Shown here: positions 44,337 through 59,992 of the stretch, piece by piece
Layout: every line of letters starts with the position of its first letter
How positions within the stretch are numbered: the first letter of the stretch is position 1
DNA from: Rebecca billardiae RCC1528
Lineage: Eukaryota > Protista > Haptophyta
Length of the DNA: 64,000 nt
Assembly (NCBI GenBank): GCA_965240325.2
Contig: OZ251241.1
Location: forward strand, 1-64,000
Direction of reading: 5' to 3'
Translations under genes and position numbers: made by a program
The notes under the pieces: generated by a model
Told to the model about the DNA's origin: nothing
The model's database searches: none
The model's input: the letters and a program-made list of their open reading frames with translations, nothing else

Positions 44337-45224
44337 CTAGGCCACTGCCCCGGGGCCTGCCTTCAGCGCGGTGACGAACATCGTGTCACCGACGCGTCGC
44401 CTGCGCGGGTAGGCGAGGGTGCGGCGCGCGCGGTCGATCCCGAGGTCGGCCACGCTGGTGGCCTCAGCCGCCCAGCCGTACTGCTGCAGCAGCGCGGGCG
44501 GGTTGTCGTGGGCCCAGAGCCACGGGCAGCCTCGGCGCTTGAGGTCATCCAGCAGCCACGAGCCCTGCATGTCGCGCAGCGTGCGGCTGCTGACCAGGTC
44601 CATGAAGAGCGCGGAGCCCGGCTGCGCCAGCGTCGAGGCCTTGTGGAAGAGCGAGAGGACCGCCCTCTCCGGCAGGTAGTACACGAGGCCCTCGAGGATC
44701 CAGATCGCTGGGCTGTGCGCGTCGAAGCCGGCGTCGAGCAGCGCACGCTCCCAGTCCGTGTGCACGGCGCCGCTGCCCGCGGCGTCGAAGTCCACCTGCA
44801 CGATGCGCCTGTCCACGCGCGCGCGCTCCTCCGGCCGCACCATCGGCTTGAGGATCGGCTCCTTCAGCGCGAAGATCTCCGGCTTGTCCACCTCGAAGAA
44901 GACAGTGCCGGGGGGCAGGGGCAGACGGTATGCCCGCGTGTCCATGCCTGCGCCCAGATCAACCACCTGACGAACCGCGCCATCCGCGCACGCCCGAAGT
45001 AGCCAGTCGTCAATGAAGCGCGTGCGGCTGACCGCGATCGGCATCGGCTCCGAGCTGCCGCCGTTGAAGGCGTAGCCCTCCTGCCCGGCAAGCGCATCGG
45101 CGAAGCGGTCGATGAAGAGCGAGTCGGGTCGCTTGGACTCGAGAGCGCGGTTCGCCGCGATCCACCGCGCCGTAGAGGCGACGGCGTCGCCCACGGTGAG
45201 CAGCGCGAGGGCCGACGACGTCAT
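44337..45224 (-). CDS. SAM-dependent methyltransferase, LCM (leucine carboxyl methyltransferase)-domain family
   Basis: TARWIAANRALE..LFIDRFA, RTRFID, QVVDLGAGMDTRAYRL, FEVD, WILEGLVYYL. Confidence 0.9.
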   Translation of the reverse strand: MTSSALALLTVGDAVASTARWIAANRALESKRPDSLFIDRFADALAGQEGYAFNGGSSEPMPIAVSRTRFIDDWLLRACADGAVRQVVDLGAGMDTRAYRLPLPPGTVFFEVDKPEIFALKEPILKPMVRPEERARVDRRIVQVDFDAAGSGAVHTDWERALLDAGFDAHSPAIWILEGLVYYLPERAVLSLFHKASTLAQPGSALFMDLVSSRTLRDMQGSWLLDDLKRRGCPWLWAHDNPPALLQQYGWAAEATSVADLGIDRARRTLAYPRRRRVGDTMFVTALKAGPGAVA

Positions 45225-45570
45225 GATCGAGAGTCGAACCTTCCAACGAATTCGGGACGACCGTTCGCCAGTCAGCCGGAAGCCGGAGCGGCAGCAGCCG
45301 TGCCACCGGACCTCAAGAACTACTGCTGCGATGGCGGTCGGTTGATGAGTATGGGGGATATGAGAATATGCCGACAAATATGATGTACATACTTCAAGCG
45401 GTGACAGTCGTAGTATCATGGCGCAGAAAGCGCAGTGTCGTTACAAGTAGGACGCAGAGCCAAGGCTGCCAGCTTTCGGCGAAGCCCTGCAGCCGCCAGC
45501 CACGCCAAGACCGCGCAAGTGCTGCCCGCACGAGGGGCGAGGCCACCGTGGTAGGCCCGCAGACAGCCGC

Positions 45571-47148: not shown

Positions 47149-47643
47149 GGCGGGCGGCGGGCGAGCTCGCTCTGGGCCTCGCCCAGCTTCCACTTCTTGG
47201 CGCCGAGCCGGAGGGATCTGCCCACCGGACCGGCACGGCCGCGCACCCTCAGCGCGCACGATTGTACATATTCCGGCCTTTGACTGTACACTCAGCGCCG
47301 CGGAAAGTGTCGCATGACAGTCATGGTCGTCATACTGATTCCCACTCCCCCACGGTCAGAGCGAACGATGGAGTCGTACACTGCTGCTGAAGGGGCACGG
47401 GCGCTGGGCAGGGCGACGACATATACTCATACCATGTACGGGCCGTATACGGCCCGCGCGCAGCGTATTACCATGCGAGCGCGCTGATGATGATTCAGCA
47501 CTGAGCGCTGATATATTATTATATGATGAATGATGATGATCGATTAGATATATATATATGAATATAATAATGAAGATCACCGACAGACTGAGTGACAGCG
47601 CGGCCCGGCGGCTACACTATTCACTAACACTCACGCTTACACT

Positions 47644-50600
47644 TTACAGCGGCGTGCACGTGCCGCACGCGCCGTCCGCGCCCGTGCAGAAGCCGATCTT
47701 GTTGTCGCCATCGATGCACAGGTGGCGCACCGAGCCGTCGCGCGTCGCGGTGTGCACGACGGGCCCGGTGAGCGTGATCGCGTCGGTCGACACGACGAGC
47801 TCGGACGCGCCCGCGGCGATCTCGACCGAGCCGGGTGCGCCCGAGGTGCTGCCGCCGGCGCTGAGCAGCACGCTGCCGCCCGCGCCCGAGTCGGACGAGC
47901 CCGCGGCGATCGTCACGTCGCCGCCGTCGCCCGAGGTCGCGGCGGAGCCGGCGGCCAGCTCGACGTCGCCGGCGTCGCTCGTCGCCGCCGAGCCCGAGCT
48001 GAGCTTGAGCGCGCCCGCGCCGCCCGCGCCCGTGGTCGAGCCCGCGCGCACGTTGACGGCGCCGCCCGCGCCGTCCGCCGCCGCGCCCGCCTGCACGGCG
48101 ACGTCGCCGCCGTCGCCCTGGTACGCGGCGCCGCCGTGCAGCATGAGCGAGCCGCCGTCGGCCGAGGTGCCCTCGAACGAGGGCGCGGCGGCGAGCACGA
48201 TGTCGCCCACGTCCGAGGCGTTGGTCGCGTTGTCCTTGACCGCGTTCAGGTTGACGCCGCCGACAAAGTCAAAGGTGCCGGTCTCGATGATGAGCCGGTC
48301 CGCCTCCACGTCGCCCGCCGCCGAGCCGACCTCGCCGCCCCCGATCTTCTCCCACTTGCCCGCGGCGCACACGACGGTCACGCCCGAGAAGCCGCCGTAG
48401 ATCGGGAAGACGTTGGCGCCGATGCGCGCCTTGTTGGCGGCCGTGCGCGCGGCCGTGGGCAGCTCGGGGCCGAAGATCTCGCGAGAGCCGTCGTGCGCGT
48501 ACACGGGCGTGGCCACGTCTGCGCGGCGCGCAGCGCGCGCGCAGCGGGCGGGGGCGAGAGGCGCGGCGCGGCGTGAGCGCGCAGCGGGCGCGCGCGGCGC
48601 GCGGCGGCGTGCGCGCGCGCACCGTCGTCGCCGAGCGCGGTGATCGAGAGCACCACGCCCGCGTTGGCCTCGGCGCAGCTCGGCGTCATGAGCGTCACCC
48701 AGCTGCAGCCGTCGAGCACGGCGGCGGTGGTGTTGACGAGCACGACCGAGAACGGGTCGGCGCTCGTGTCGAGCGAGACGACGCACGAGGCCGCGAGCGA
48801 GGTGGGCAGCACGTCCACGCGGTGCCGCGGCAGGCCCATCGCGCCGCCAAACCGGATCGAGTCCGCCCCGTCGGCGCCGAGCACGACGTCGCCGTGCACC
48901 TCCGCGCCGCCCGAGATGTGCGCGCCCATCGAGGCGGAGAGCGCGCCGCCCACGGCGAGGTGCGAGCCGACGTGCGCGCTGCCGCCGACGCTGAGCGTCT
49001 CGAAGAGGCGCACGTGGTCGGTGAAGTTGGACGCGGCGCTCACGAGCAGGCTGCCGCCAATCGAGGCGCCGCCGTTGAACGCCGTGTCGCCCGAGACGCT
49101 GAGGCCGCCGGCGAGGTCGAGCAGGTCGGCGGACGCGTCCCAGTGCACGTACGCCGCGCCCGACGTGCCGTACGCCGTGAGGTCCGCGCCCGCGCTCGCC
49201 GAGCCCGCCTCGACGCCGCCGCCAAACGCGCCGGGGCCGTCGGCGCGCACCGCGCCCGTCGCGCTGAGCGCGCCGCTCAGGCTGACGTCGCCGCTGAGCG
49301 AGACAGCGCCCGTCACGCCGAGCGCGCCGTTGAGCGCGAGGGCGTTCGTGTTGAAGTCCCACGCCACGTGCGAGCCCGGCGCCGCGCCGAACGCCTTGAA
49401 GTCGTGCCCGCTGCCCTCGGAGCCGAGCGTGAGGTCGCCGCCGACCGCCACGTCGGCGGAGAAGGCGGAGAGGCCCGTCACAGAGAGCGACGAGGCGATG
49501 GTGACGGTGCCGGCGATGGTGACCGCGCCGTCGAGCGCCGTCGCGCCGCTCACCTCGATGTCGCCCGTCACGTCCACGTCGCCGAGCAGCGCCACGTCGC
49601 CGCTCACCGACACGGCCGCCGTCACGTCGAGCACGTCGCCCGCAAACGAGACGGACGAGCCGGGGCTGGCGCCGTGCAGGGTCACGTCCGAGCCGGCGCC
49701 GTCCGCGCCGACGGTGAGCGCGCCGCCGATGGTCGCGCCGCCGCTGACCGTCGCGGCGCCGCCGACGCTCAGCCCCGCGCCCACGCTCGCCGCGCCGCCG
49801 ATCGTCGCGCCGCGGCTGACCGCCGCCGCGCCGCGCACGTCGAGCGTGTTGGTGGTCGACTCCCACTTGGCGAACGAGCCGGCGGCAGAGCCGTGCAGCG
49901 TCACGGCCGAGCCCTCGGCGGGCTCGCCGACGGTGAGCGCGCCGCCGACGGCGAGGGAGGAGGCGAGCGTGGCGGCGCCGCTCACGTCGATCGCGCCGTT
50001 CAGCTCCGTCGGGCCGACGATGCTCATCTGGCCGATCACGTCCACGTCGGAGGTGACGGTGAGCGTGTTGAGCGCGTACCGCACGGACGAGCCCGCGGCC
50101 ACGCCGTGCAGGGTCACGCCCACGCCCGCGCCGGGCGCGCCGGTGGTGAGCGCGCCGGTGATGGTGGTGGCGCGCAGCGCGGACGCGCCGGTGACGGAGA
50201 GCGAGCCCGCCGTCGCCGCGCCCGAGACGCTCGCGGAGCCGGTGATCGTCGTCGCGCCGCGCAGCGCGGTCGCGCCCGCGACGGTGAAGGTGTCGGTGCC
50301 GGGCGCCCAGCGCGCAAACGAGCCGCTGCTCGCGCCGTGCGCGAGGAGGGTGACGCCCGCCTGGCTGGCGCCGAGCGTGACGTCGCCGTTGAAGGTGACC
50401 GGCCCCTGCGGCGTGAACGCGCCCGAGACGCTCAGGTCGCCGTCCACCGCCGTGTCGCCGTTGAGGAACGTCTGCCCGTTCTGGTCGAGCTCGCCCGAGA
50501 TGGAGAGCGCGTTCTGCGACGCGTCCCACTGCACAAACTTGCCCGCCTGCGCGCCGTAGAGCAGCACGTCGAAGCCCGCGGCGTTGCGGCCGAAGGTGGC

Positions 50601-53600
50601 GCCGCGGCGCACGTTGAGCGCGCCGTCGACGAGCTCGAGGTCGCCCACCACGCTCAGGTCGCCGTCGATGTCCGAGTCCCCGCCGACGGACATGCCATTG
50701 TTGAGCACGTCCAGGTGGCCGGTCAGCTCCCAGTCGCCCACGACGCGGTGCGCGTTCGAGCCGGCGGGCGCGAGGAACTGGATGGTGCCGTAGACGTCGA
50801 GGCGGTTGGCGTCCTCGACCCACTCCATGAAGAGGCCCGGCTGGTTGCCGTACAGCGTCACCGTGAAGCCCGCGCCGTTCTCGCCCACCGTCAGGTCGCC
50901 GCCGACCGAGAGCTCGTTGCCGACGCTGAGCGAGCGCGCCACCTGCAAAGAGTTTGAGAAGGCGGCGGCGCCGCCCACGTCGAGCGAGCCGACGACGGTC
51001 ATGTCGCCGTCGCACGCGAGCGAGCCCTGGATGGAGAAGTCGCCGGTGAACGACGCGTCGCCCTCGATCACCAGGTTGTCCGTCGTCTGCAGCTGCCGGC
51101 GCGACGGGTCGTGCACGAGGCCGCCGTCCGTCTTGACGTACTCGCTCGGGCGGCGCAGCGCGACACGCTGCGCGCGCTCCTCGTCCGTCTCGTCGCGCAG
51201 CTCGCCGTCCTCCGCGAGGAGCTGGCGGCGGCGGCGCGCGCCGGTGATGGAGAGGGTGCCCGTGACGGTGAGGTCGTTGAACGTCGCCGCGCCCGTCATC
51301 GCCATGTCGCCCGTCACGGTGAGCAGCCCCGTGTGCTCAAAGTCGCCGCGCGAGCGCACGTCGCGCGTGTTGAGGATGAGCGCGTCCGCGTCGTAGTCCC
51401 ACTCGAGGTACGAGCCGGCCGTCGCGCCGTAGAAGCGCACGTTGTGCCCCGCGTCGTCGACGCCGACGTTGAGCTCGCCGCGCAGCGTCGTCGCGCCCGT
51501 GAGCGAGAGGTCGCCCGTCGCGACGATGTTGCCCTCCGTCTCGATGTCGCCGATCACGGTGAGGTCGCCCGTCTGGTCGATGCCGCCAAAGATGGTGAGC
51601 ACGTCCGCAGACCACTCGAGGTACGAGCCGGGGAGCGCGCCGAAGAGCTTGGTGGCGTGGCCCGAGCCGGCCGAGCCGCTGGTGAGCGAGCCGCGCAGCA
51701 GCGTCGCGCCGCGCAGCGTCGAGCCGCCCGTCACCTCGAGCGTGCTCGAGAGCGTCGCCGCGCCGCCGACCGCGAGCGTGCCGCCCAGCGCCGAGGCGGC
51801 GCTCACCGAGAGCGCGCCCGTGATCGCGAGCCGGTCCTGGTCCTCGTCCCAGAGCAGCTGCGAGCCCGAGGTCGAGCCGTAGAGGCGCACGTCGTGCCCG
51901 CCGCCCGCCGCGCTGCCCACCGTGAGCGTCGAGTCGACCGAGACCGCGCCGTTGAGCACGGCCGCGCCCTCGGCGGTGAGCGCGCCGCCGAGCACGTTGA
52001 AGCCGCCCTCCGCGCTCACCGACGGCCCCGAGAGCACAACGTCGCCGACGACGCGCAGCGTGTCGTCCGACGCGTCCCACCAGAGGTACGAGCCGGAGGA
52101 GGCGCCGTACGCGCGCAGGTCGGCGCCCGCCTCGTCCGCGCCGATCGTCGTCGCGCGCGCGATGCCGACCGTCGAGTCGAAGCTGGCCGCGCCGCCGACG
52201 GCCAGGCTGTCGCCGAGCGTGGCGGCGCTCGAGACGTCGAGCGCCGCGTCGATCGAGAAGCTCGAGCCGCTCGCCGAGACGTCGCCGGCGATGGTGACGG
52301 GGCCGGTCGCGTCGAGCTCGCCCCTGAGCTCGAGCTTGTTCGTGTTCCAGTCCCACAGCGCGTACGACGCCGGGTTAGCGCCGTACAGGTAGAGGTCAAA
52401 GCCCGAGCCGGGGGTGCCGACGCGCACGTTGCCCGTCACCTGCACCGCGCCCGTGATCGCGGTCGCGCCCGTCACCGAGACGGTGGCGGCGGAGACGACG
52501 ACGTCGCCGGTGAGCGTGAGGTCGCCGGTGAGCGTGAGGTCGCCGGCGAGCGAGGCATCGCCCGTGACCGAGAGCGCGCCGGCGATCGACGTGGCGCCCG
52601 TGATGCTCGTCGGCGCGGCGACGGCGAGCGCATCCGACGCAAACTCGAGCGAGACGCCCGCGCTCGCGCCGTGCAGGATCACGTCGTGGCCCGCGCCGTC
52701 CGCGCCGACGGTGAGCGCGCCCTGCAGCACGGACGCGCCGCTCATCGACAGGCCGCCCGCGCCGACGATCACGCCGCCCGCCGACAGCGCGCCGCCCACG
52801 CTCACGTCGGCCGAGACGCTCGCGCCGCCCTGCAGCTGCAGCTCGTCGTCCGAGGCCGCCCAGCGCAGGAAGGAGCCCGCGCTCAGGCCGTCGAACGTCA
52901 CGTCGTGCCCGCTCACGCTGAGCGCGCCGTCGACGGCGAGCGCGCCGCCGAGGCTCGACGCGCCGCTGACCGCGAGCGCGCCGCTCAGCGTCGTGGGCCC
53001 CGTCACGCCGAGCGCGCCCGTCTGCGCCACGTCGCCCTCGATGGTGAGCGTGTCGGCCGCGTACACGATGGCCGAGCCGGCCGACGCGCCCAGCAGCGTG
53101 GTCGTGCGGCCGGCGCCCACGCTCAGGTCGCCGTCGAGCGTGGTCGCGCCGCTGAGCGTGCTCGCGCCCGAGACGGCAAGCGCGCCGCCGAGCGCCACGT
53201 CGCCGCTCACGCCCATGCCGCCGCTCAGCGCCGCGTCGCCCGTGAGCTGCAGGGCGCCCTTGACGTCGAGCGTGTCCGTGTCCTCGTCCCACAGCAGGTA
53301 CGAGCCCGAGGAGCCGCCGTACGCGCGCAGGTTGTGGCCGGCGCCGCCGTCCGCGCCGAGGGTGAGCGAGCCGCTCAGGCCGACGTCGCCCGTGATGCTC
53401 GCGCCGCCGGCGGCGCTGAGCGCGCCGCCGACGCTGAGCGCGCCCGTGGTCGACGCGTCGCCGCCGAGGGCCGTGCTGCCGAGCACGCGCAGCGCGTTGG
53501 CGCCCGCGTCCCACTGCAGGGACGAGCCGCTGCTGAGGCCGTTGACGCGGAGCGAGGCGCCCACGCCGACCGCGCCGATCGTCGTGTCGCCGCCCACGCT

Positions 53601-56600
53601 GAGCGCGCCGTCGACGTCCGCGCCGAGCGCGACGGCGAGCGCGCCGCCGAGCGTCGCCGTGCCGCCGAGCGCGAGGCCGCCGCTCGCGGCCAGCGTGCCG
53701 GGCGAGCCCGAGACGGAGAGGCTGCCGTCGACGGACACGTCGGCGACGAGCGAGGCGGAGCCCTGGAGCTGCAGCGTGTTGGTGTTCTGGTCCCAGCTCA
53801 GGTGCGAGCCCGGCGCCGCGCCGTGCAGCACCACGTCGTGCCCGCTGCCGTCCGCGCCGACGGTGAGCGTGTCGAGCGCGGTGAGCGTGCCCTCGAGCGT
53901 GGTCGCGCCCGCGAGCACGACAGAGCCCGCGTCGACGTGCAGGTCGCCGACGACGGAGGTGGTGGCGGCGGTGAGCGAGATGGCGTCGCCGTCGACGGCG
54001 AGGTCGCCCGACACGGCGAGGTCGCCGACGATCGCCGACGCCCCCGTGATCGACACCGTCGCCGTCACGTCGAGCGCGTCGCCCGACAGCTGCACGCTCG
54101 CGCCGCCCGAGCCGTGCAGAGTCACGTCCACGCCCGACCCGGACGCGCCCACGGTGAGCGGGCCGGTGATGGCGACGGCGCCGCCGCCGAGCGTGGCGCC
54201 GGCGGTGGTGGTGAGCCGGCCGCCCACGCTCGCGGCGCCGCCGATCGTCGCCGTGCCGCTCACCGTCGCGTCGCCGCGCAGCTCGAGCGCGTCCGCGTCC
54301 GCGTCCCAGCGCAGGTGCGAGCCGCTCTCGGAGCCTTGGAAGAGCACGCCCCCGCCCGAGACGGACAGCCCGCCCGAGGCGATGGAGACGTCGCCGGTGA
54401 GGGTCGAGGGCGCGTTGACGGCGAAGGCGCCCGCCGAGACCGACACGCCCAGCGGCGTGTCCACCTCGAGCTTCCCCTCAATCATCGTCGCCGAGCGCAC
54501 GGTGAGCTGGTCGGCCGCGTACTCGAGCGAGGAGCCCGCAGAGGCGCCGTGCACGCGCAGGGGGACGCCCGCGCCCGCGCCGCCGAGGGTGACGTCGCCG
54601 CCGAGGAGCGTGGAGGGCCCGGTGAGCGTGATCCCGCTCGCCGCCGACACCTCGACCGACACGTCGTCCGCCGACGCGAGCGTCACCGAGCCCGCGCCCG
54701 TCGAGCCGCGGCCGCCGCGCAGCGTGACGGAGCCGCCGAACGAGCCGAGCGAGCCGTCCACGTCCGCGCCGCGCACGACCACGTTGCCGCCGGTGGTGCC
54801 GGTGGCGTCGGCGGGGGACTGGCCGGCGATGACGAGCTGGGAGGTGGGCGAGGTGGACGTCGTCGCGGCCGGCGTGAGCAGCACGCGCTCCGTGCCGTCG
54901 CCCAGCTCCACCGTGCCGGACGCGGGCGCGACGCGCACGGGCGCGCCCTCGGCCGAGCTGAGCGCGGTGCCCGCGCTCAGCGAGAGGCCGCCGCCCGGCG
55001 CGTCGACGGTGATGGCGTTGGTGGCGCGCAGCTCGAGCGCGTCGGCGTTGGTGATGCGCGGCACGGTGAGCACGCCCGCCTCGCTCAGCGAGAACGTGCC
55101 CGCCGCGTTGAACATCGACGTGCCCAGCTCGACGCCGCCGTCTCCGACTGAGAGCAGCGTCGCGCTCTGGTCTGACGCGAGGAAGGCCACGGTGCCGGCC
55201 GCGCCGCTGCCCTGGCCCGAGCCGGCCATCAGCAGCACGTCGCCGCCGTTGGCGTTGGTCGAGCCGACGCCGGCGTCGCCCGCGCGCAGCAGCAGCTCGC
55301 CGCCGTCCGTCTGGAACGCCGACGTCGCCGCGTCCGAGCCCGCCTGCCCCGCGAGCGTCGTGCGCGTCGGCTCGGCGCTCGCCGGCGGCCGGCCGAGCGT
55401 GGCCGCGCTCGCGCCGTCGCCCACGCGCACCTCGTGGCTGCCGGCGGAGTCGAGCGTGAGCGGCGTGGCCGCGCCGGCGGCGGCGGTGATCGTCGCGCCC
55501 GCCGAGAGCGTCACGCCCGCGTCCGCCGCGACGTCCACGCCGCCGCCCGCGCCCGCCGCCTGCACGGACGGCGTGGCGACCGAGCCGCTCGCCGAGACGG
55601 TGCCGGCCGAGAGCGCCGCGGCTTGGAGCGCGCCCGTCGAGCCCGTGGCGACGATCTGGTCGCCGACGCGGAGGGTCTCGGCGGTGAGCAGCCCGCTCAC
55701 CTCGGTCTGCGCGGCGTCGCCGTTCACCGAGAACGCGACGAGCGGCTCGCCGCCCTCGCTCGCCAGCGAGAGCGACGAGCCCTGCAGCACGAGCCCGCCC
55801 GCAAAGGTGGCCAGCCCGTCCACGCGCAGCTGCCCGCCCACAGAGAGGACGGCCGACGACGGGCCGTCGAGCGCGCCGGCGGAGAGCACGGGGTTGCCCG
55901 CGGCGGTGGTGACGTCGAGGGCGTACGCGTCCACCTCGCCGTTCACCGCGAGCTGCGCCAGGTCCGCCGTCGTGCTGCCGCTGATCGTCACCGAGTCGAG
56001 CGTGGCGCCCGCGATCGTGCCGCCCGAGAGCGTGTGCGCGCCGAGGGAGAGGTCCGAGCCGAGCGCGGCGGCGGAGAGCGAGGCGACGCCCGAGAGGACG
56101 CCGCCGGGGGCGAAGGAGGCGCCGTTGACGAGGACGGCCTGCGCACTCGTGACCGAGAGCTCGCCCGCGCCGCTGTGCGCCAGCGCCGCGTCCTCCCCCG
56201 TGAAGCTCAGCTCGGAGCCCACCTGCGCGCTCGTGAAGGCGGCGGGCGCGGGCTCCTCCGCGCCAATCGTCACGCCCTCCATGCTGCCGCCCACCAGCGC
56301 GGCGTTGAGCAGCTCGTGGCCCGCGGCGTCGAGGTCGGCGGAGAGCGCGTCGACGGCGAGCGCGGTGGCCGAGAGCGTGGTGAACGCACCCGTCGCGCGC
56401 GTCGTGCCGCCGATCACCACGCCGTCCGCCGTGCCGCCCGAGAGCGCGGCGTTGCTCACAACCTGCGCGCCCGCGTCGAGCGGCCCGCCGAGCGTCTGCG
56501 CGCGCAGCGTGGTGAAGGAGGCGGCGGCGGGCGTGGTGCCGCCGATGGTCGCGGCGTCGATGGTGCCGGCGCTGATCGCCGCGGCGGACAGCGTCGCGCC

Positions 56601-59600
56601 GCTCGCGTCGATCGCGCCGCTGAGCTTGCTCGGCGCGAGCGTGCCGCCGCTGAGCGTTGCGCCGCTCTCGAGCTCGACGCCGCGCACGCCGCTCAGCTGC
56701 GCGTCGCGGAAGGCCACGCCCTCGACCGAGACGAAGCCGTTGGTCGAGGCGAGCGAGAGGGAGGAGGCGGCGGAGGCGGCGGTGTGCTCGATCCGCGCGG
56801 ACGCCGACGTGAACGCCACCGACGTCGGCACGCTCACCGAGCCGTCGGAGAAGGCGACGTCCTCGACGCGCACGCTGCCCTCCGCGCCCACGATGCGCGC
56901 GGGCCCAGACGTGAAGCGCAGCTGGCCCGACAGGTCGAGGTCGACGATGCCGGAGACGTCGTTGTCCGGGCTGAAGGAGATGTCGAAGATCTCGACGCCG
57001 TGGGGCGATTGCAGCTGCAGCGCGCCCTCCGTCTCGCCGAACGTCTGCGCGCCCGAGACGATCAGGTCGCCCGCCACCTGGAGGTCGCCGTTGGTGCTGA
57101 GCGTGCCCGTGGCGAGCATCGTGCCGTCGGGGCGGAGCTCGAGCACCTTGCGGCCCTCGAGGTTGGAGGAGCCGTCGGCCGGGCGGTAGACGAAGAGGCC
57201 CTGCGACGCCTCGGCCTGCCGCACCTCCCACCCGTCGTCCGCGTCCGTGCTCGCCGCGACCACGAGCGACGCGCGCCCCGGGCCGAGCACGCTCGCCGTC
57301 GCCGTGCCGGTGGGGAGCAGCGCGCCCACGGAGAGGGCGGCCGCGCCGTCCGAGCGCACTTCCAGCGCGCCCTCGACGCTCGCGCCGCCGCCGAGCTGGG
57401 CGGCGCCGTCGACGGCGAGCGACGCGCGGGCGCGCAGGCTCGAGAGGACCGTCGTCTCCCCGCCGCCCGACGCGCCCACGTGCACGCCCGCGCCGCCCGC
57501 GCCGAGCACGAGCGCGGCGTCGTCCGCGCCGTCGATGGAGTCGACGACCTGCGCCCCGTGCAGCTGCACGGCCGAGGAGGCCGCGCCGAGCCGCACGACG
57601 CCGGCGGGGGAGCCGGCGCCGCCGTCGAGCACGAGCGCGCCGCCGGCCACGTCGTGCGCCGCCTCGCCGCCGCGCAGCACCAGGTCGCCCGCCGGCTGGC
57701 GCTCGAGCGCCGCCTGGCCGCTGATCACGGTGGCGGAGGTTGCAGCCGAGGCGGTGCGCCCAATCTCAAAGTCGAGGCCGGCCGTGTGCGAGAAGGTGAG
57801 CTCGCCGATGGCGACGGAGGTGTCGTCCGCGTCGGAGGCGCCGTCCTGGAGAGCGCGCCCGCGCCGCGTGCCGTCCGTGCTCCCGCCGAGCGTCAGCGTG
57901 CCCGCCGTCGCGCGGATCGACGAGCCGGCGATGCTCACGTCGCCCGCGCTCACGCCGGCCGCGCCGACGACGAGGGCGCCGCCCGCGATGCTGAGCGTCT
58001 GCCCGCCCGCGTTGAGCGCGCTCGCGGTGAGCGCGGCTGCGCGGCGGCGGGCGGGGCGGGCGGGGCGCGCGCGGCGCGCGGGCGGGGGGCATGGCGTGAG
58101 GACGGGCTCGCGCGCGCGCAGCACGGCGGAGGCCGCGGCGGCGCGCGCGCGCGCCGTCCGCCGCGCGAGCGCGGTGCTGCTGTGCGCGCTCTCTCACCAG
58201 TGCTGAGCTCATTCTCGATGGTGACCGCGCCGCCGATGGTGACGGCGCCGCACCCCTGCTGCGCGCTGCAGTCGCGGTTGATGTTGATGCCCTGCCCGTC
58301 GCCCGAGCTCAGCCGCAGCGCGCCCGCCGACGCGATGCGCGCCACGTTGACCGTCTCCGCGTCGAGCGAGGCGCCTGTGCCGAGCGTGATGCCGCCGCCC
58401 TCGACAATCATCCGGCTGCCCGGGATCACGCGCACGGCCGAGTCGGACGCGGAGGAGATGACGAGGGCGGAGGCGGAGCCGACGCCGTCGGTGATGAGCG
58501 AGTGGCCCGAGCTGATCTCCAGGTTCGCCGCCGTCACCTGCACCGAGCCGCCCCCCGGCTCGAGCTTGATCGACTTGTCGGCCGCGGACGTGAGCTTGAG
58601 CTCGGACGCGCCCGTGATCTCCTCGGCGCGCACGGAGCCGATCACGTCCAGGTTGGAGGCGACCTGCGTCTGCCCGTCGCCGCCGGGGGCGAGGGTGACG
58701 TTGGCGCCCGTGCCCGAGATCAGCGAGAGCTTCTCGTTCGAGAAGAGGCTCGGCGCGCTCAGCTTGTCCACGTCGATGTTGGTCGTGGTGAAGCCGCCCG
58801 TCTGCGCGCGCACAGACAGACACACAGGCGCGCGCACACACGGCACGGCGCGGCGGCGCGGCGCGGCGGCGCGGCGCGGCGGCGCGGCGCGGCGGCGCGG
58901 CGCGGCGCAGGACGGCGCGGGCGGGCGTGAGCGCGCGTGAGCGCGCGCGGGCGGGCGCGGGCGCGCGCGCGGCGGCGCTTCCTCTCGGCGCGCGCCCCGC
59001 GCCCCGCCGCCCGCCCCGCGCGCCGCGCCGCGCACCGCGAGCGGCGTGATCTGGTAGACGGCGGAGATGATGACGCCCCCAAACACGAGGAACAGCGCGT
59101 CGTTGATCAGCAGCAGCAGGAAGACGGCGAGCATGAGCAGCCGGCGCGTGCGCTTGGCGTCCTTCTTGGAGGCCTCGAGGAACGGGGCGAGGCCGGGCGG
59201 CGGCGCGCCCGGCGGCCCGCCGCCCGCGCCGCCGCCGCCCTGCATGGGGAACTGCGTGCGCCCCATGCCGTCGCCCAGCCCGGCGTCAGGCATGCCCTCG
59301 GCCGCGCGCCCGGCGGCGGTCGGCGGCGCGTTGAGCGGCGGCAGGCGGTTGCCGCGCGGGCCCGCGTCGTCGAGGCCGGCGCGCGGCTTGGGCGGCTGGC
59401 GGAAGCCGCGCACGCCGCTCCCCGAGCCCGGCGTGTACGCGTCCGCCTCGCCCGGCCCGCCGCGGAAGCCGCGCGGCCCGGCCGCGCGCGCGCGCGCCTC
59501 GGCCTCCGTCATCTCGACCGGGCCGGTGTCGTTGCGGAACTGGCCCTGCTGCCGGCCCGCCTGGCGGCCGGTGCCGCCGCGCACGGTGCGCGCGCCCGGC

Positions 59601-59992
59601 GGCGGCGCGCCGCCCTCCGCGCCGCCCTCGGCCACGCGGTACGCGCCGCCCGGGTTGTTGCGCGAGCGCGACGCGACGCGCGGCGGCGGCGTGCCGACGT
59701 CCGCGCCGGGCGGCGCGCCGCCGTCGATGCCGGTGGACTGCGTCGGCGTGACTTGGGTGTTGTACGCGCGCGAGCCCGCGCGCCGCCCGCCGCGCGGCGC
59801 GGGCGCGCCCCCGCCCGCCGACGGCGGCGGCGTCTGTTCCGCCGAGCTTGTGGGCCGCAGCGGCTCGGGCGTCGAGCCGCCGCCGCCCGTGTTGGCCATG
59901 CCCTCCGGGCCGACGCGCGAGCGGTAGCCGCGCGCACCGCGCGGAGGCGCGCTCTCCTCGCCGCCGCCACCTTCGGGCGGCCGCTCAGACAT
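47644..59992 (-). CDS. Giant (~3,950 aa) type II membrane-anchored Gly/Ala/Ser/Thr/Val-rich repetitive fibre-like protein; exons 59992-59036, 58801-58198, 58036-48623, 48518-47644
   Basis: Three GT-AG introns join three track ORFs in frame (11,850 nt). One TM near the N-terminus; ~22 recurring aromatic-containing repeats. Confidence 0.88.

What the first reader, a model, noticed from the sequence alone, without database searches (positions are those of the whole stretch)
47644..59992. Giant membrane-anchored protein built from phage tail-fibre-like repeats
Seen: a spliced ~3,950-aa gene with a Pro/Gly-rich N-terminus, one TM (LLMLAVFLLLLINDALFLVFGGVII) and a ~3,600-aa ectodomain. About 22 copies of [VIL]GxxGxGxDVxL[HY]GxxxGSxLxWDxxxxxL (e.g. 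VGVDDAGHNVRFYGATAGSYLEWDYDADAL, ~51378-51467) are separated by 6-residue G-x-L-x-V-x repeats. From recollection and not a search, these resemble marine phage tail-fibre sequences and trimeric beta-fibre shafts. Inference: a domesticated virus-like fibre displayed on an algal surface (adhesin, flagellar hair or scale filament, prey capture, or viral decoy). This is the best candidate here for an undescribed system.
Basis: partly seen in the sequence, partly recalled or inferred. Interest (0 to 1): 0.88.

Follow-up and report, generated by a model that had tools for sequence, protein, structure and literature searches.

The report
Algal giant membrane fibre from viral repeats
A haptophyte alga of the order Pavlovales carries a real, spliced gene for a 3,949-residue membrane-anchored rod whose outer half is 22 copies of a repeat otherwise found in tail-fibre proteins of uncultured marine phages and in giant viruses, so it looks like an old viral fibre module reused by the cell.

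Summary

**Gene and protein**
- The minus-strand gene has four exons and three GT..AG introns, and encodes 3,949 aa.
- It has a Gly/Pro/Arg-rich N-terminus, a single hydrophobic segment (aa 285-312), and about 3,640 aa of all-beta sequence after it.
- There are exactly 22 motif units (49083-54620), separated by spacers with a period of 6 residues.
- Orthologues with the same layout exist in Diacronema lutheri, Pavlovales sp. CCMP2436, and an intron-less 12.5-kb contig. All are unnamed.

**Link to viruses**
A profile of the 22 units finds 3,812 protein clusters.
- Those clusters include proteins on T4-like phage contigs, proteins with Peptidase_S74 tail-fibre ends, and proteins on giant-virus-like contigs.
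- A profile built only from the 555 phage-like units finds 21 units in the window (E 1e-148).
- The repeat has no Pfam family and no solved structure. It is rare in bacterial genomes and was not found in cultured phages.

**Fold, origin and function**
- AlphaFold2 (pLDDT 80) gives a single-chain beta-solenoid. A trimeric fibre was not tested.
- Surface display, viral origin and function are inferred, not shown.
- This is a new variant of a known kind. Interest about 0.6.

The parts
59036..59992 (-). Exon 1. ATG at 59992. Encodes a 284-aa Gly/Pro/Ala/Arg-rich presumed cytosolic head with three RG[FY]R motifs, then the membrane segment.
   Evidence: the motifs are also present in P0002 and L002
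59057..59140 (-). Single hydrophobic signal-anchor (aa 285-312), preceded by KKDAKRTRR. Predicted type II orientation, N-terminus inside.
   Evidence: the only stretch with Kyte-Doolittle above 2.0; an equivalent segment occurs in P0002 and L002
58802..59035 (-). Intron 1, GT..AG, 234 nt, in frame but Arg/Pro/Ala junk.
   Evidence: absent from L002, where the junction reads ITPL-R-TGGF
58198..58801 (-). Exon 2: start of the ectodomain, beta-rich, with two Cys.
58037..58197 (-). Intron 2, GT..AG, 161 nt.
   Evidence: the frame change of 2 matches the ORF frames; no gap in the L002 alignment
48623..58036 (-). Exon 3, 9,414 nt: the bulk of the ectodomain.
57798..57866 (-). Basic/acidic linker A (aa ~578-600, TRRGRALQDGASDADD). 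Possible hinge or processing site.
   Evidence: equivalents in L002 and P0002
49083..54620 (-). Array of 22 virus-type fibre units, each a ~50-aa core plus hexapeptide spacers at 68-98 aa spacing. Subtype order is sLsLLLsLsLLLsLLLLsLsLL, a super-repeat of about 486 aa.
51240..52172 (-). The four-unit segment that was modelled. It is all-beta with short strands and is predicted to be a beta-solenoid.
   Evidence: pLDDT 79.7, pTM 0.60; beta-helix adhesins and tailspikes, Z 7.4-8.9
51063..51236 (-). Basic/acidic linker B between units 14 and 15 (RRRRQLL ... SRRQLQ). It accounts for the 194-aa spacing there.
   Evidence: conserved in P0001 and P0007
48519..48622 (-). Intron 3, GT..AG, 104 nt.
   Evidence: colinear with L002 and P0001 across the junction
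48216..48839 (-). Distal 'tip' region with conserved Cys, split by intron 3. No known family and no confident model.
47644..48518 (-). Exon 4: the rest of the tip, Gly-rich GGDVxVxAG-type repeats, a C-terminal Cys-rich tail (C..GFC..C..C), and the stop at 47644-47646.

Best explanation
This is a vertically inherited nuclear gene of a Pavlovales haptophyte. It encodes a single-pass type II membrane protein.

Layout of the protein:
- A 284-aa Gly/Pro/Arg-rich head with RG[FY]R motifs stays in the cytosol.
- One signal-anchor helix holds the protein in the membrane.
- About 3,640 aa of all-beta sequence projects outward as a stiff rod.
- The outer half of the rod is 22 units of a ~50-aa core motif plus hexapeptide spacers.
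- The rod ends in a Cys-containing tip and a Gly-rich cap, which form the distal end.

The repeat unit is homologous to a repeat that builds tail-fibre and virion proteins of uncultured marine tailed phages, and proteins of marine giant viruses.

Most likely history: the module was captured from a virus before the Pavlovales genera diverged, then expanded into a fixed 22-unit array.

Most likely fold: a beta-solenoid of roughly 0.1 micrometre, assuming 18 residues per 0.48-nm coil.

Most likely role: a cell-surface or flagellar-surface fibre used for attachment, a surface coat, or virus interception.

Shown here: the gene structure, the repeats, the homology and the conservation. Inferred: membrane topology, surface location, rod geometry, direction of transfer and function.
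For: Gene model:
- Three GT..AG introns with matching frame changes, and a spliced ORF of 3,949 aa.
- Colinear alignment to the intron-less L002 across all three junctions.

Cellular context:
- Window GC is 0.73-0.80 across the gene and its immediate flanks. D. lutheri is 73.25% (PMC8379373).
- The downstream neighbour is an LCM methyltransferase.

Orthologues:
- P0001 (CCMP2436) 39% identity, P0002 (D. lutheri KFE25_002446) 35%, L002 44%.
- P0002 and L002 show the same head, membrane segment and Cys tail.
- P0001 has 22 units at nearly the same spacings and the same subtype order.

Topology: one hydrophobic segment with a basic N-flank.

Homology to viral fibres:
- The profile of the 22 units finds 3,812 clusters at E<=1e-3 and 1,075 at E<=1e-10.
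- P0005 lies on a contig with T4 gp13/gp14/gp15-type genes.
- P0011 and P0012 carry Peptidase_S74 and match PHROG tail-fibre and tail-spike families.
- IMG/VR loci place the protein next to virion structural genes.
- At least 566 IMG/VR contigs carry it, against 8 loci in 185,579 prokaryotic species genomes.
- A phage repeat segment hits the window by tblastn at 34% identity over 366 aa.
- The phage-only profile gives E 1e-148 with 21 units.

Giant viruses:
- P0043, P0066 and P0160 lie on contigs with Rpb1/Rpb2/Rpb5, HSP90 and similar genes, at GC 24-35%.
- The 'short' unit subtype occurs in 32/139 Pavlovales units, 6/32 giant-virus units and 0/560 phage-like units.

Fold:
- AF2 gives pLDDT 79.7, all short strands.
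- Nearest solved folds are beta-helix adhesins and tailspikes: EtpA Z 8.9 with rmsd 4.2 over 270 aa, HMW1 Z 8.8, cyanophage Pam1 tailspike Z 7.8.
- Nearest Atlas shapes are Uroviricota clusters.
Against: - There is no expression or localisation data for this genome. No RNA run was listed, and L002 is only inferred to be a transcript.
- The structural matches are at the level that unrelated models often reach (Z 8-9; Foldseek found nothing significant).
- A monomer model cannot tell a single-chain solenoid from an intertwined trimer.
- The unit tree is unresolved, so neither the donor nor the direction of transfer is established.
- Overall unit similarity is highest to phage-type units, while the indel subtype points to giant viruses.
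- The tip domain gave no usable model (pLDDT 45) and has no homologue outside the family. Nothing supports a particular ligand.
- The repeat was not found in 50,697 cultured phage records. 'Tail fibre' therefore rests on metagenomic context and PHROG/Pfam labels of neighbouring domains, not on a characterised protein.
Confidence: 0.6

Rival explanations
1. Same gene and same homology, but the ectodomain works as a homotrimer. Three chains would form a phage-like fibre (side-by-side or intertwined beta-helices), and not a single-chain solenoid.
For: Some phage relatives of the repeat end in Peptidase_S74, the intramolecular chaperone of trimeric fibres and spikes. Weak Foldseek rows include the phage Mu fibre-chaperone complex 6o38 and viral fibres. 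The period-6 strands suit a triple beta-helix as well as a solenoid.
Against: The Pavlovales proteins have no S74 or other recognisable trimerisation domain. The AF2 monomer folds with fair confidence into a closed solenoid (pLDDT 79.7, pTM 0.60). Its best matches are single-chain beta-helices.
Confidence: 0.3
2. The transfer ran the other way. The repeat arose in Pavlovales or their ancestors and was captured by giant viruses that infect them.
For: Giant viruses often take up host genes (general knowledge). The short unit subtype is shared only by Pavlovales and one giant-virus protein family.
Against: The repeat is far more diverse and abundant in tailed phages, which do not infect eukaryotes. 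It occurs in at least 566 IMG/VR contigs, and the checked non-algal hits among the 3,812 clusters were phage-like or giant-virus-like. Among named eukaryotic proteins, only Pavlovales appeared. By score, Pavlovales units are closest to the phage-type consensus.
Confidence: 0.15
3. It is part of an endogenous viral element (an integrated giant virus or a polinton-like virus) and encodes a virion fibre, not a cellular protein.
For: Haptophyte genomes, including D. lutheri, hold integrated polinton-like viruses. PgVV-type elements encode a tail-fibre-like virion protein (bioRxiv 10.1101/2022.07.28.501842).
Against: The gene has three spliceosomal-type introns and the same GC as its flanks, about 0.74-0.80. 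Its neighbour is a cellular LCM methyltransferase, and no viral family was found in the flanks. Orthologues with conserved architecture exist in at least three other Pavlovales sources at 35-44% identity. No close copy exists in IMG/VR.
Confidence: 0.03
4. The likeness to phage proteins is convergent low-complexity similarity between Gly/Ala/Ser/Thr-rich beta repeats.
For: The ectodomain is compositionally biased: G 17%, A 16%, S 11%. The 53-aa units taken singly hit no PHROG.
Against: A specific 30-aa motif with conserved G, D, V, aromatic-G, G-S, W-D and L positions is shared. The phage-only profile gives 21 hits in one frame only, with the best unit at 60 bits. tblastn with the SEG filter on still gives E 1e-38.
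Confidence: 0.02

Closest known systems
Repeat-bearing tail-fibre and virion proteins of uncultured marine tailed phages (e.g. P0005 on a T4-like contig; P0011 and P0012 with Peptidase_S74; PHROGs phrog_5070, phrog_4549, phrog_35655)
   Same: They share the ~30-aa core motif ([VIL]GxxxxGxDVxFYGxxxGxxxxWDxxxxxL), present in several tandem copies with short beta-strand spacers.
   Different: They are 200-1,500 aa with 3-14 units. They have phage N-terminal attachment domains and often an S74 chaperone end. They have no membrane anchor and no introns, and are encoded in virion modules. They carry only the 'long' unit subtype.
Giant-virus (Nucleocytoviricota-like) proteins P0066 and P0160, and the N-terminally anchored P0043
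   Same: They share the repeat. The P0160 family also has the short unit subtype otherwise seen only in Pavlovales. P0043 has an N-terminal hydrophobic anchor followed by units, which is the same topology in miniature.
   Different: They are 700-1,250 aa with 4-8 units, AT-rich and Asn/Lys-rich. They are encoded next to viral RNA polymerase subunits. Units of P0066 and P0160 score lower against the window profile than phage units do.
Hypothetical proteins KFE25_002446 (Diacronema lutheri) and T492DRAFT_1003562 (Pavlovales sp. CCMP2436)
   Same: They are orthologues. KFE25_002446 shows the same head, membrane segment and Cys tail. T492DRAFT_1003562 has 22 units with the same spacing and the same tip region.
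   Different: Identity is only 35-39%. The D. lutheri protein lacks the globular tip and Gly-rich cap. The CCMP2436 model lacks the N-terminal half. Neither is named or characterised.
Right-handed beta-helix adhesins of bacteria (EtpA, HMW1/FHA-type two-partner-secretion proteins; pertactin and Ag43 autotransporters) and phage tailspikes
   Same: They are the best structural matches of the AF2 model. They are long rod-like beta-solenoids displayed on a surface for attachment.
   Different: There is no sequence relationship. The window protein has no TPS domain and no beta-barrel translocator. The anchors differ, and the match level (Z 8-9) is not decisive.
Flagellar hairs of protists, such as Chlamydomonas and stramenopile mastigonemes (from my own knowledge, not tested here)
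   Same: They are a possible functional analogue: long proteinaceous filaments anchored at the flagellar or cell membrane.
   Different: They are built from unrelated proteins. No evidence here places the Pavlovales protein on flagella.

Membership tests
Marine-virus fibre repeat (no Pfam entry; partly captured by phrog_5070, phrog_4549, phrog_35655) | Core motif of about 30 aa with conserved G..G.G.DV.[FLY][FYH]G...G....WD.....L | tested here: met
   Alignment A1. The profile finds viral proteins down to E 1e-94. The phage-only profile finds 21 units in the window, E 1e-148.
Marine-virus fibre repeat (no Pfam entry; partly captured by phrog_5070, phrog_4549, phrog_35655) | Several tandem units separated by short beta-strand spacers | tested here: met
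   22 units at 68-98 aa spacing. Viral proteins have 3-14 units at 45-95 aa spacing.
Marine-virus fibre repeat (no Pfam entry; partly captured by phrog_5070, phrog_4549, phrog_35655) | Encoded in a virion or tail structural module of a virus | tested here: not met
   The gene is intron-containing, has host GC, and sits beside a cellular methyltransferase. No viral families were found in the flanks.
Phage tail fibres and spikes with an intramolecular chaperone | C-terminal Peptidase_S74 domain | tested here: not met
   No Pfam hit in any exon or in the orthologue's C-terminus. It is present in relatives P0011 and P0012.
Hexapeptide-repeat left-handed beta-helix proteins (Pfam Hexapep) | Period-6 repeat recognised by the family profile, and a left-handed beta-helix fold | tested here: inconclusive
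   Period 6 is present, but there is no Hexapep hit at E<=1. LpxA, LpxD and GlmU match the model only at rmsd about 12 A.
Bacterial beta-helix adhesins (two-partner secretion, autotransporters) | TPS secretion domain or C-terminal beta-barrel translocator | tested here: not met
   No such Pfam domains. There is only a fold-level likeness of the rod.
Endogenous viral element | Viral hallmark genes alongside, no introns, composition unlike the host | tested here: not met
   there is also no close viral copy in IMG/VR
Type II single-pass membrane protein | One uncleaved signal-anchor with a positive cytosolic flank, and the C-terminus outside | tested here: met
   Met at the sequence level only: one hydrophobic segment at aa 285-312 after KKDAKRTRR. 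Actual topology is not testable with these tools.

The most novel reading that the evidence does not exclude
The Pavlovales lineage domesticated a receptor-binding fibre module of marine viruses. It turned that module into a conserved, 0.1-micrometre, membrane-anchored surface filament. The filament forms the fine hairs or coat of the cell or flagellum, or acts as a decoy or barrier against its own giant viruses. That would be the first eukaryotic surface structure built from a phage or giant-virus fibre repeat.
Probability: 0.25. Interest if true: 0.85.

Novelty: new variant of a known kind. Interest (0 to 1): 0.6.

Why it matters
- If the protein is on the surface, it gives a molecular candidate for the poorly understood surface hairs or coat of Pavlovales, which are used in aquaculture and lipid research.
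- It would also be a clear case of a viral structural module reused by a eukaryotic cell.
- The work defines a large repeat family of marine viral fibres that is so far unnamed. It has 3,812 clusters at 50% identity, no Pfam entry and no solved structure, and was not found in cultured phages.
- That family links tailed phages, giant viruses and an alga. It deserves a family model and a structure.

Tried and rejected
**Searches with no result**
- Pfam on all exons gave nothing above cut-off (pAdhesive_15 E 0.0015).
- PHROGs on single 53-aa units gave nothing.
- tblastn of the window array, and of a phage-like array, against 50,697 cultured phage records gave no match. A local control showed the SEG filter is not the reason.
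- A PDB search by sequence with the unit profile gave only chance-level hits.
- No RNA sequencing run was listed for this DNA.
- IMG/VR scans with the window's own peptides gave no close viral copy.
- Literature searches found no description of this protein family.

**Structure attempts**
- Foldseek of the model against PDB and BFVD gave no significant match, only fibre-like and beta-helix-like weak rows.
- The tip region had no Pfam or PDB hit and no homologue outside the family. Its AF2 model, from a 5-row alignment, failed at pLDDT 45.

**Other dead ends**
- I recalled a second 'IGxxxPxxGxFTxL' phage motif in the N-terminal ectodomain. It was not found in any of the 172 fetched relatives and was dropped.
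- The unit tree (49 columns, FastTree) was too poorly resolved to name a donor.

**Readings rejected**
- The endogenous-virus and low-complexity readings are rejected for the reasons given under rival explanations.
Full report
**1. What is in the sequence**

The window is extremely GC-rich, 0.60-0.84 in 2-kb steps and 0.73-0.80 across the gene. On the minus strand, three long ORFs in different frames cover 59992-47644.

Reading the DNA gives three canonical GT..AG introns:
- 59035-58802 (234 nt)
- 58197-58037 (161 nt)
- 48622-48519 (104 nt)

Each intron length modulo 3 equals the frame change between the ORFs it joins. The spliced CDS is 11,847 nt plus a stop, giving 3,949 aa with no internal stop.

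The model is confirmed independently. The spliced protein aligns colinearly at 44% identity, with no gap at any junction, to uninterrupted reading frames of a 12,551-nt contig from another source (L002, JGI sample 3300016954). The P0001 protein is also colinear across junction 3.

L002 starts a few dozen bases before the start codon and ends about 150 nt after the stop. I therefore take it to be a transcript. This is an inference: it has no poly(A), and I could not check the sample's metadata.

**2. Anatomy of the protein**

- **aa 1-284:** Gly/Pro/Ala/Arg-rich, with three RG[FY]R motifs that recur in the orthologues.
- **aa 285-312:** the only strongly hydrophobic segment, preceded by KKDAKRTRR. 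By the positive-inside rule (general knowledge), this predicts a type II signal-anchor with the rest of the protein outside.
- **Ectodomain (about 3,640 aa):** G 17%, A 16%, S 11%, with only 0.6% Lys.
- **Repeat array:** the distal half holds exactly 22 units in one frame, 49083-54620.
- **Unit subtypes:** there are two, 'long' (..WD.....L) and 'short' (two residues fewer). Their order is sLsLLLsLsLLLsLLLLsLsLL, a super-repeat of about 486 aa.
- **Spacers:** sequence between the cores has period 6. Autocorrelation peaks fall at lags 6, 12 and 18, and DNA repeats of period 18 run through the region.
- **Linkers:** two basic/acidic insertions flanked by RR(R)xLQ-type motifs interrupt the rod at aa ~578 and aa 2788-2840. 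Both are conserved in the orthologues.
- **C-terminus:** a Cys-containing region, then Gly-rich GGDVxVxAG-type repeats, then a Cys-rich tail.

**3. Relatives in algae**

A word-indexed search with the array found two long proteins:
- T492DRAFT_1003562 of Pavlovales sp. CCMP2436 (39% identity)
- KFE25_002446 of Diacronema lutheri (35% identity)

The D. lutheri protein has the same head, membrane segment and C-terminal Cys tail.

The CCMP2436 protein has 22 units whose spacings track those of the window almost one for one. For example, the window series begins 68, 75, 98, 93, 73, 80 and the CCMP2436 series begins 73, 73, 98, 93, 71, 79. The enlarged gap is 194 aa in the window and 210 aa in CCMP2436. 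The subtype order is nearly the same.

The array is therefore old and its geometry is conserved, while the sequence has drifted to 35-44% identity. Shorter paralogous fragments also exist in CCMP2436 and in JGI contigs.

The window's GC matches that reported for D. lutheri, 73.25% (PMC8379373). The organism is therefore a Pavlovales haptophyte, but not one of the two named genomes.

**4. Relatives in viruses**

A profile of the 22 units was searched exhaustively against 1.84 billion representatives. It gave 3,812 proteins at E<=1e-3, 1,075 at E<=1e-10 and 125 at E<=1e-30.

Evidence that the non-algal hits checked are phage proteins:
- P0005 lies on a contig with DUF4815, T4 gp13, neck protein and gp15 genes.
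- P0011 and P0012 end in Peptidase_S74 and match PHROG tail-fibre, tail-spike and virion-protein families. Many further hits carry S74.
- Two IMG/VR loci place the protein beside virion structural genes.

Distribution of the phage form, using one set of peptide patterns:
- at least 566 IMG/VR contigs
- 8 loci in 185,579 bacterial and archaeal species genomes, all marine MAGs or SAGs
- none in 50,697 cultured phage records

A local control shows that BLAST's low-complexity filter is not the cause of that last blank.

Homology to the window is direct:
- tblastn of a phage array hits the window at 34% identity over 366 aa.
- A profile made only from the 555 phage-like units finds 21 units in the one frame of the window, E 1e-148, with the best unit at 60 bits.
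- The window protein also hits phrog_5070 (E 6e-14) and the tail-fibre family phrog_4549 (E 2e-5).

The repeat has no Pfam family and no solved structure by sequence.

**5. Giant viruses**

Three further hits lie on contigs whose neighbouring genes are typical of Nucleocytoviricota: RNA polymerase Rpb1/Rpb2/Rpb5, HSP90, dUTPase, a protein kinase and ClpP. Their GC is 24-35%.
- P0043 has an N-terminal hydrophobic anchor followed by four units, which is the Pavlovales topology in miniature.
- The short unit subtype occurs in 32 of 139 Pavlovales units and in 6 of 32 giant-virus units, all six in one protein family. It occurs in none of 560 phage-like units.

By overall score, the Pavlovales units are nearer to the phage-type consensus. 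A tree of units on 49 columns is unresolved.

The donor is therefore open. A giant virus of the alga is an attractive intermediary, but this is not shown.

**6. Fold**

AlphaFold2 on a four-unit block (311 aa, 26-row alignment) gives pLDDT 79.7 and pTM 0.60. The model consists wholly of 3-5-residue strands.

Structure comparisons:
- Foldseek finds nothing significant in PDB or BFVD. The weak viral rows are fibres, and one unit-length match reaches 45% identity.
- The exhaustive aligner ranks right-handed beta-helix adhesins and tailspikes first: EtpA Z 8.9 (rmsd 4.2 A over 270 residues), HMW1 Z 8.8, pertactin Z 8.4, cyanophage Pam1 tailspike Z 7.8.
- The nearest Atlas shapes are Uroviricota clusters, one of them all-S74.

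These Z values are near what unrelated models can reach. I read them only as 'the model is a beta-solenoid rod'. A trimer was not testable.

If the whole ectodomain is a solenoid of about 18 residues per 0.48-nm coil, it would be about 0.1 micrometre long. This is my own arithmetic from general beta-helix geometry.

The tip region could not be modelled (pLDDT 45) and has no relatives outside the family.

**7. What it is not**

It is not an inserted virus:
- It has introns and host-like composition.
- Its neighbour is a cellular LCM methyltransferase.
- No viral families were found in the flanks.
- There is no close copy in IMG/VR.

It is not a member of the Hexapep family, the autotransporter family or the two-partner-secretion family.

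**8. Verdict**

The reading 'domesticated viral fibre on the algal surface' is the best available, but three of its steps remain inferences: the direction of transfer, surface display and the trimeric shaft. Function is unknown. I commit to a surface attachment or coat fibre as the most likely role.

No paper in the searchable library describes the protein or the repeat. Tail-fibre-like proteins are known in haptophyte viruses and polinton-like viruses, so the general theme is not new.

I rate it a new variant of a known kind, with interest about 0.6.

Earlier notes of this scan near the locus concern transposons and other genes, and did not bear on this reading.

Noticed in passing
window 59036-59992 (-), aa 1-284; also P0002 aa 1-265 and L002: The presumed cytosolic head carries three or four copies of an RG[FY]R motif (for example PRGARGYR, PRGFRGG, VRGFRQ), conserved in all three orthologues. 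It could be an arginine-methylation site or a docking motif.
   Followed up: partly
window 57798-57866 and 51063-51236 (-): Two basic/acidic linkers flanked by RR(R)xLQ-type motifs interrupt an otherwise Lys/Arg-poor rod and are conserved in the orthologues. They are candidates for kexin-type cleavage sites or hinges.
   Followed up: partly
P0003-P0151; loci L001, L006-L085: The repeat defines a large unnamed family of marine viral proteins (3,812 clusters at 50% identity, at least 566 IMG/VR contigs). It has no Pfam model and no solved structure, gave no match in 50,697 cultured phage records, and gave only 8 loci in 185,579 prokaryotic species genomes.
   Followed up: partly
L003:686-2788 (P0043): A giant-virus-like contig (Rpb1 fragment, glycosyltransferase, patatin; GC 35%) encodes a 700-aa protein with an N-terminal hydrophobic anchor and four units that are nearly identical to the phage-type consensus.
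   Followed up: partly
L004:4305-13723 and L005:4224-13765: Two giant-virus-like contigs share the same gene order upstream of the repeat protein: methyltransferase, trypsin/PDZ protease, a ~460-aa protein, then the 1,240-1,254-aa repeat protein.
   Followed up: no
window 44337-45419 (-): The downstream neighbour is a leucine carboxyl methyltransferase family protein (PF04072, E 2e-40), an ordinary cellular gene.
   Followed up: partly
window 47540-47640: Just after the stop codon the GC-rich sequence gives way to an AT-rich stretch with (TA)n and ATCAT repeats. It is possibly the 3' end or terminator region of the gene.
   Followed up: no
window 47750-48215 (-); P0222: The Gly-rich C-terminal repeats (GGDVxVxAG type) resemble, at 31% identity, long arrays of similar repeats in an unnamed 909-aa metagenomic protein.
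   Followed up: partly
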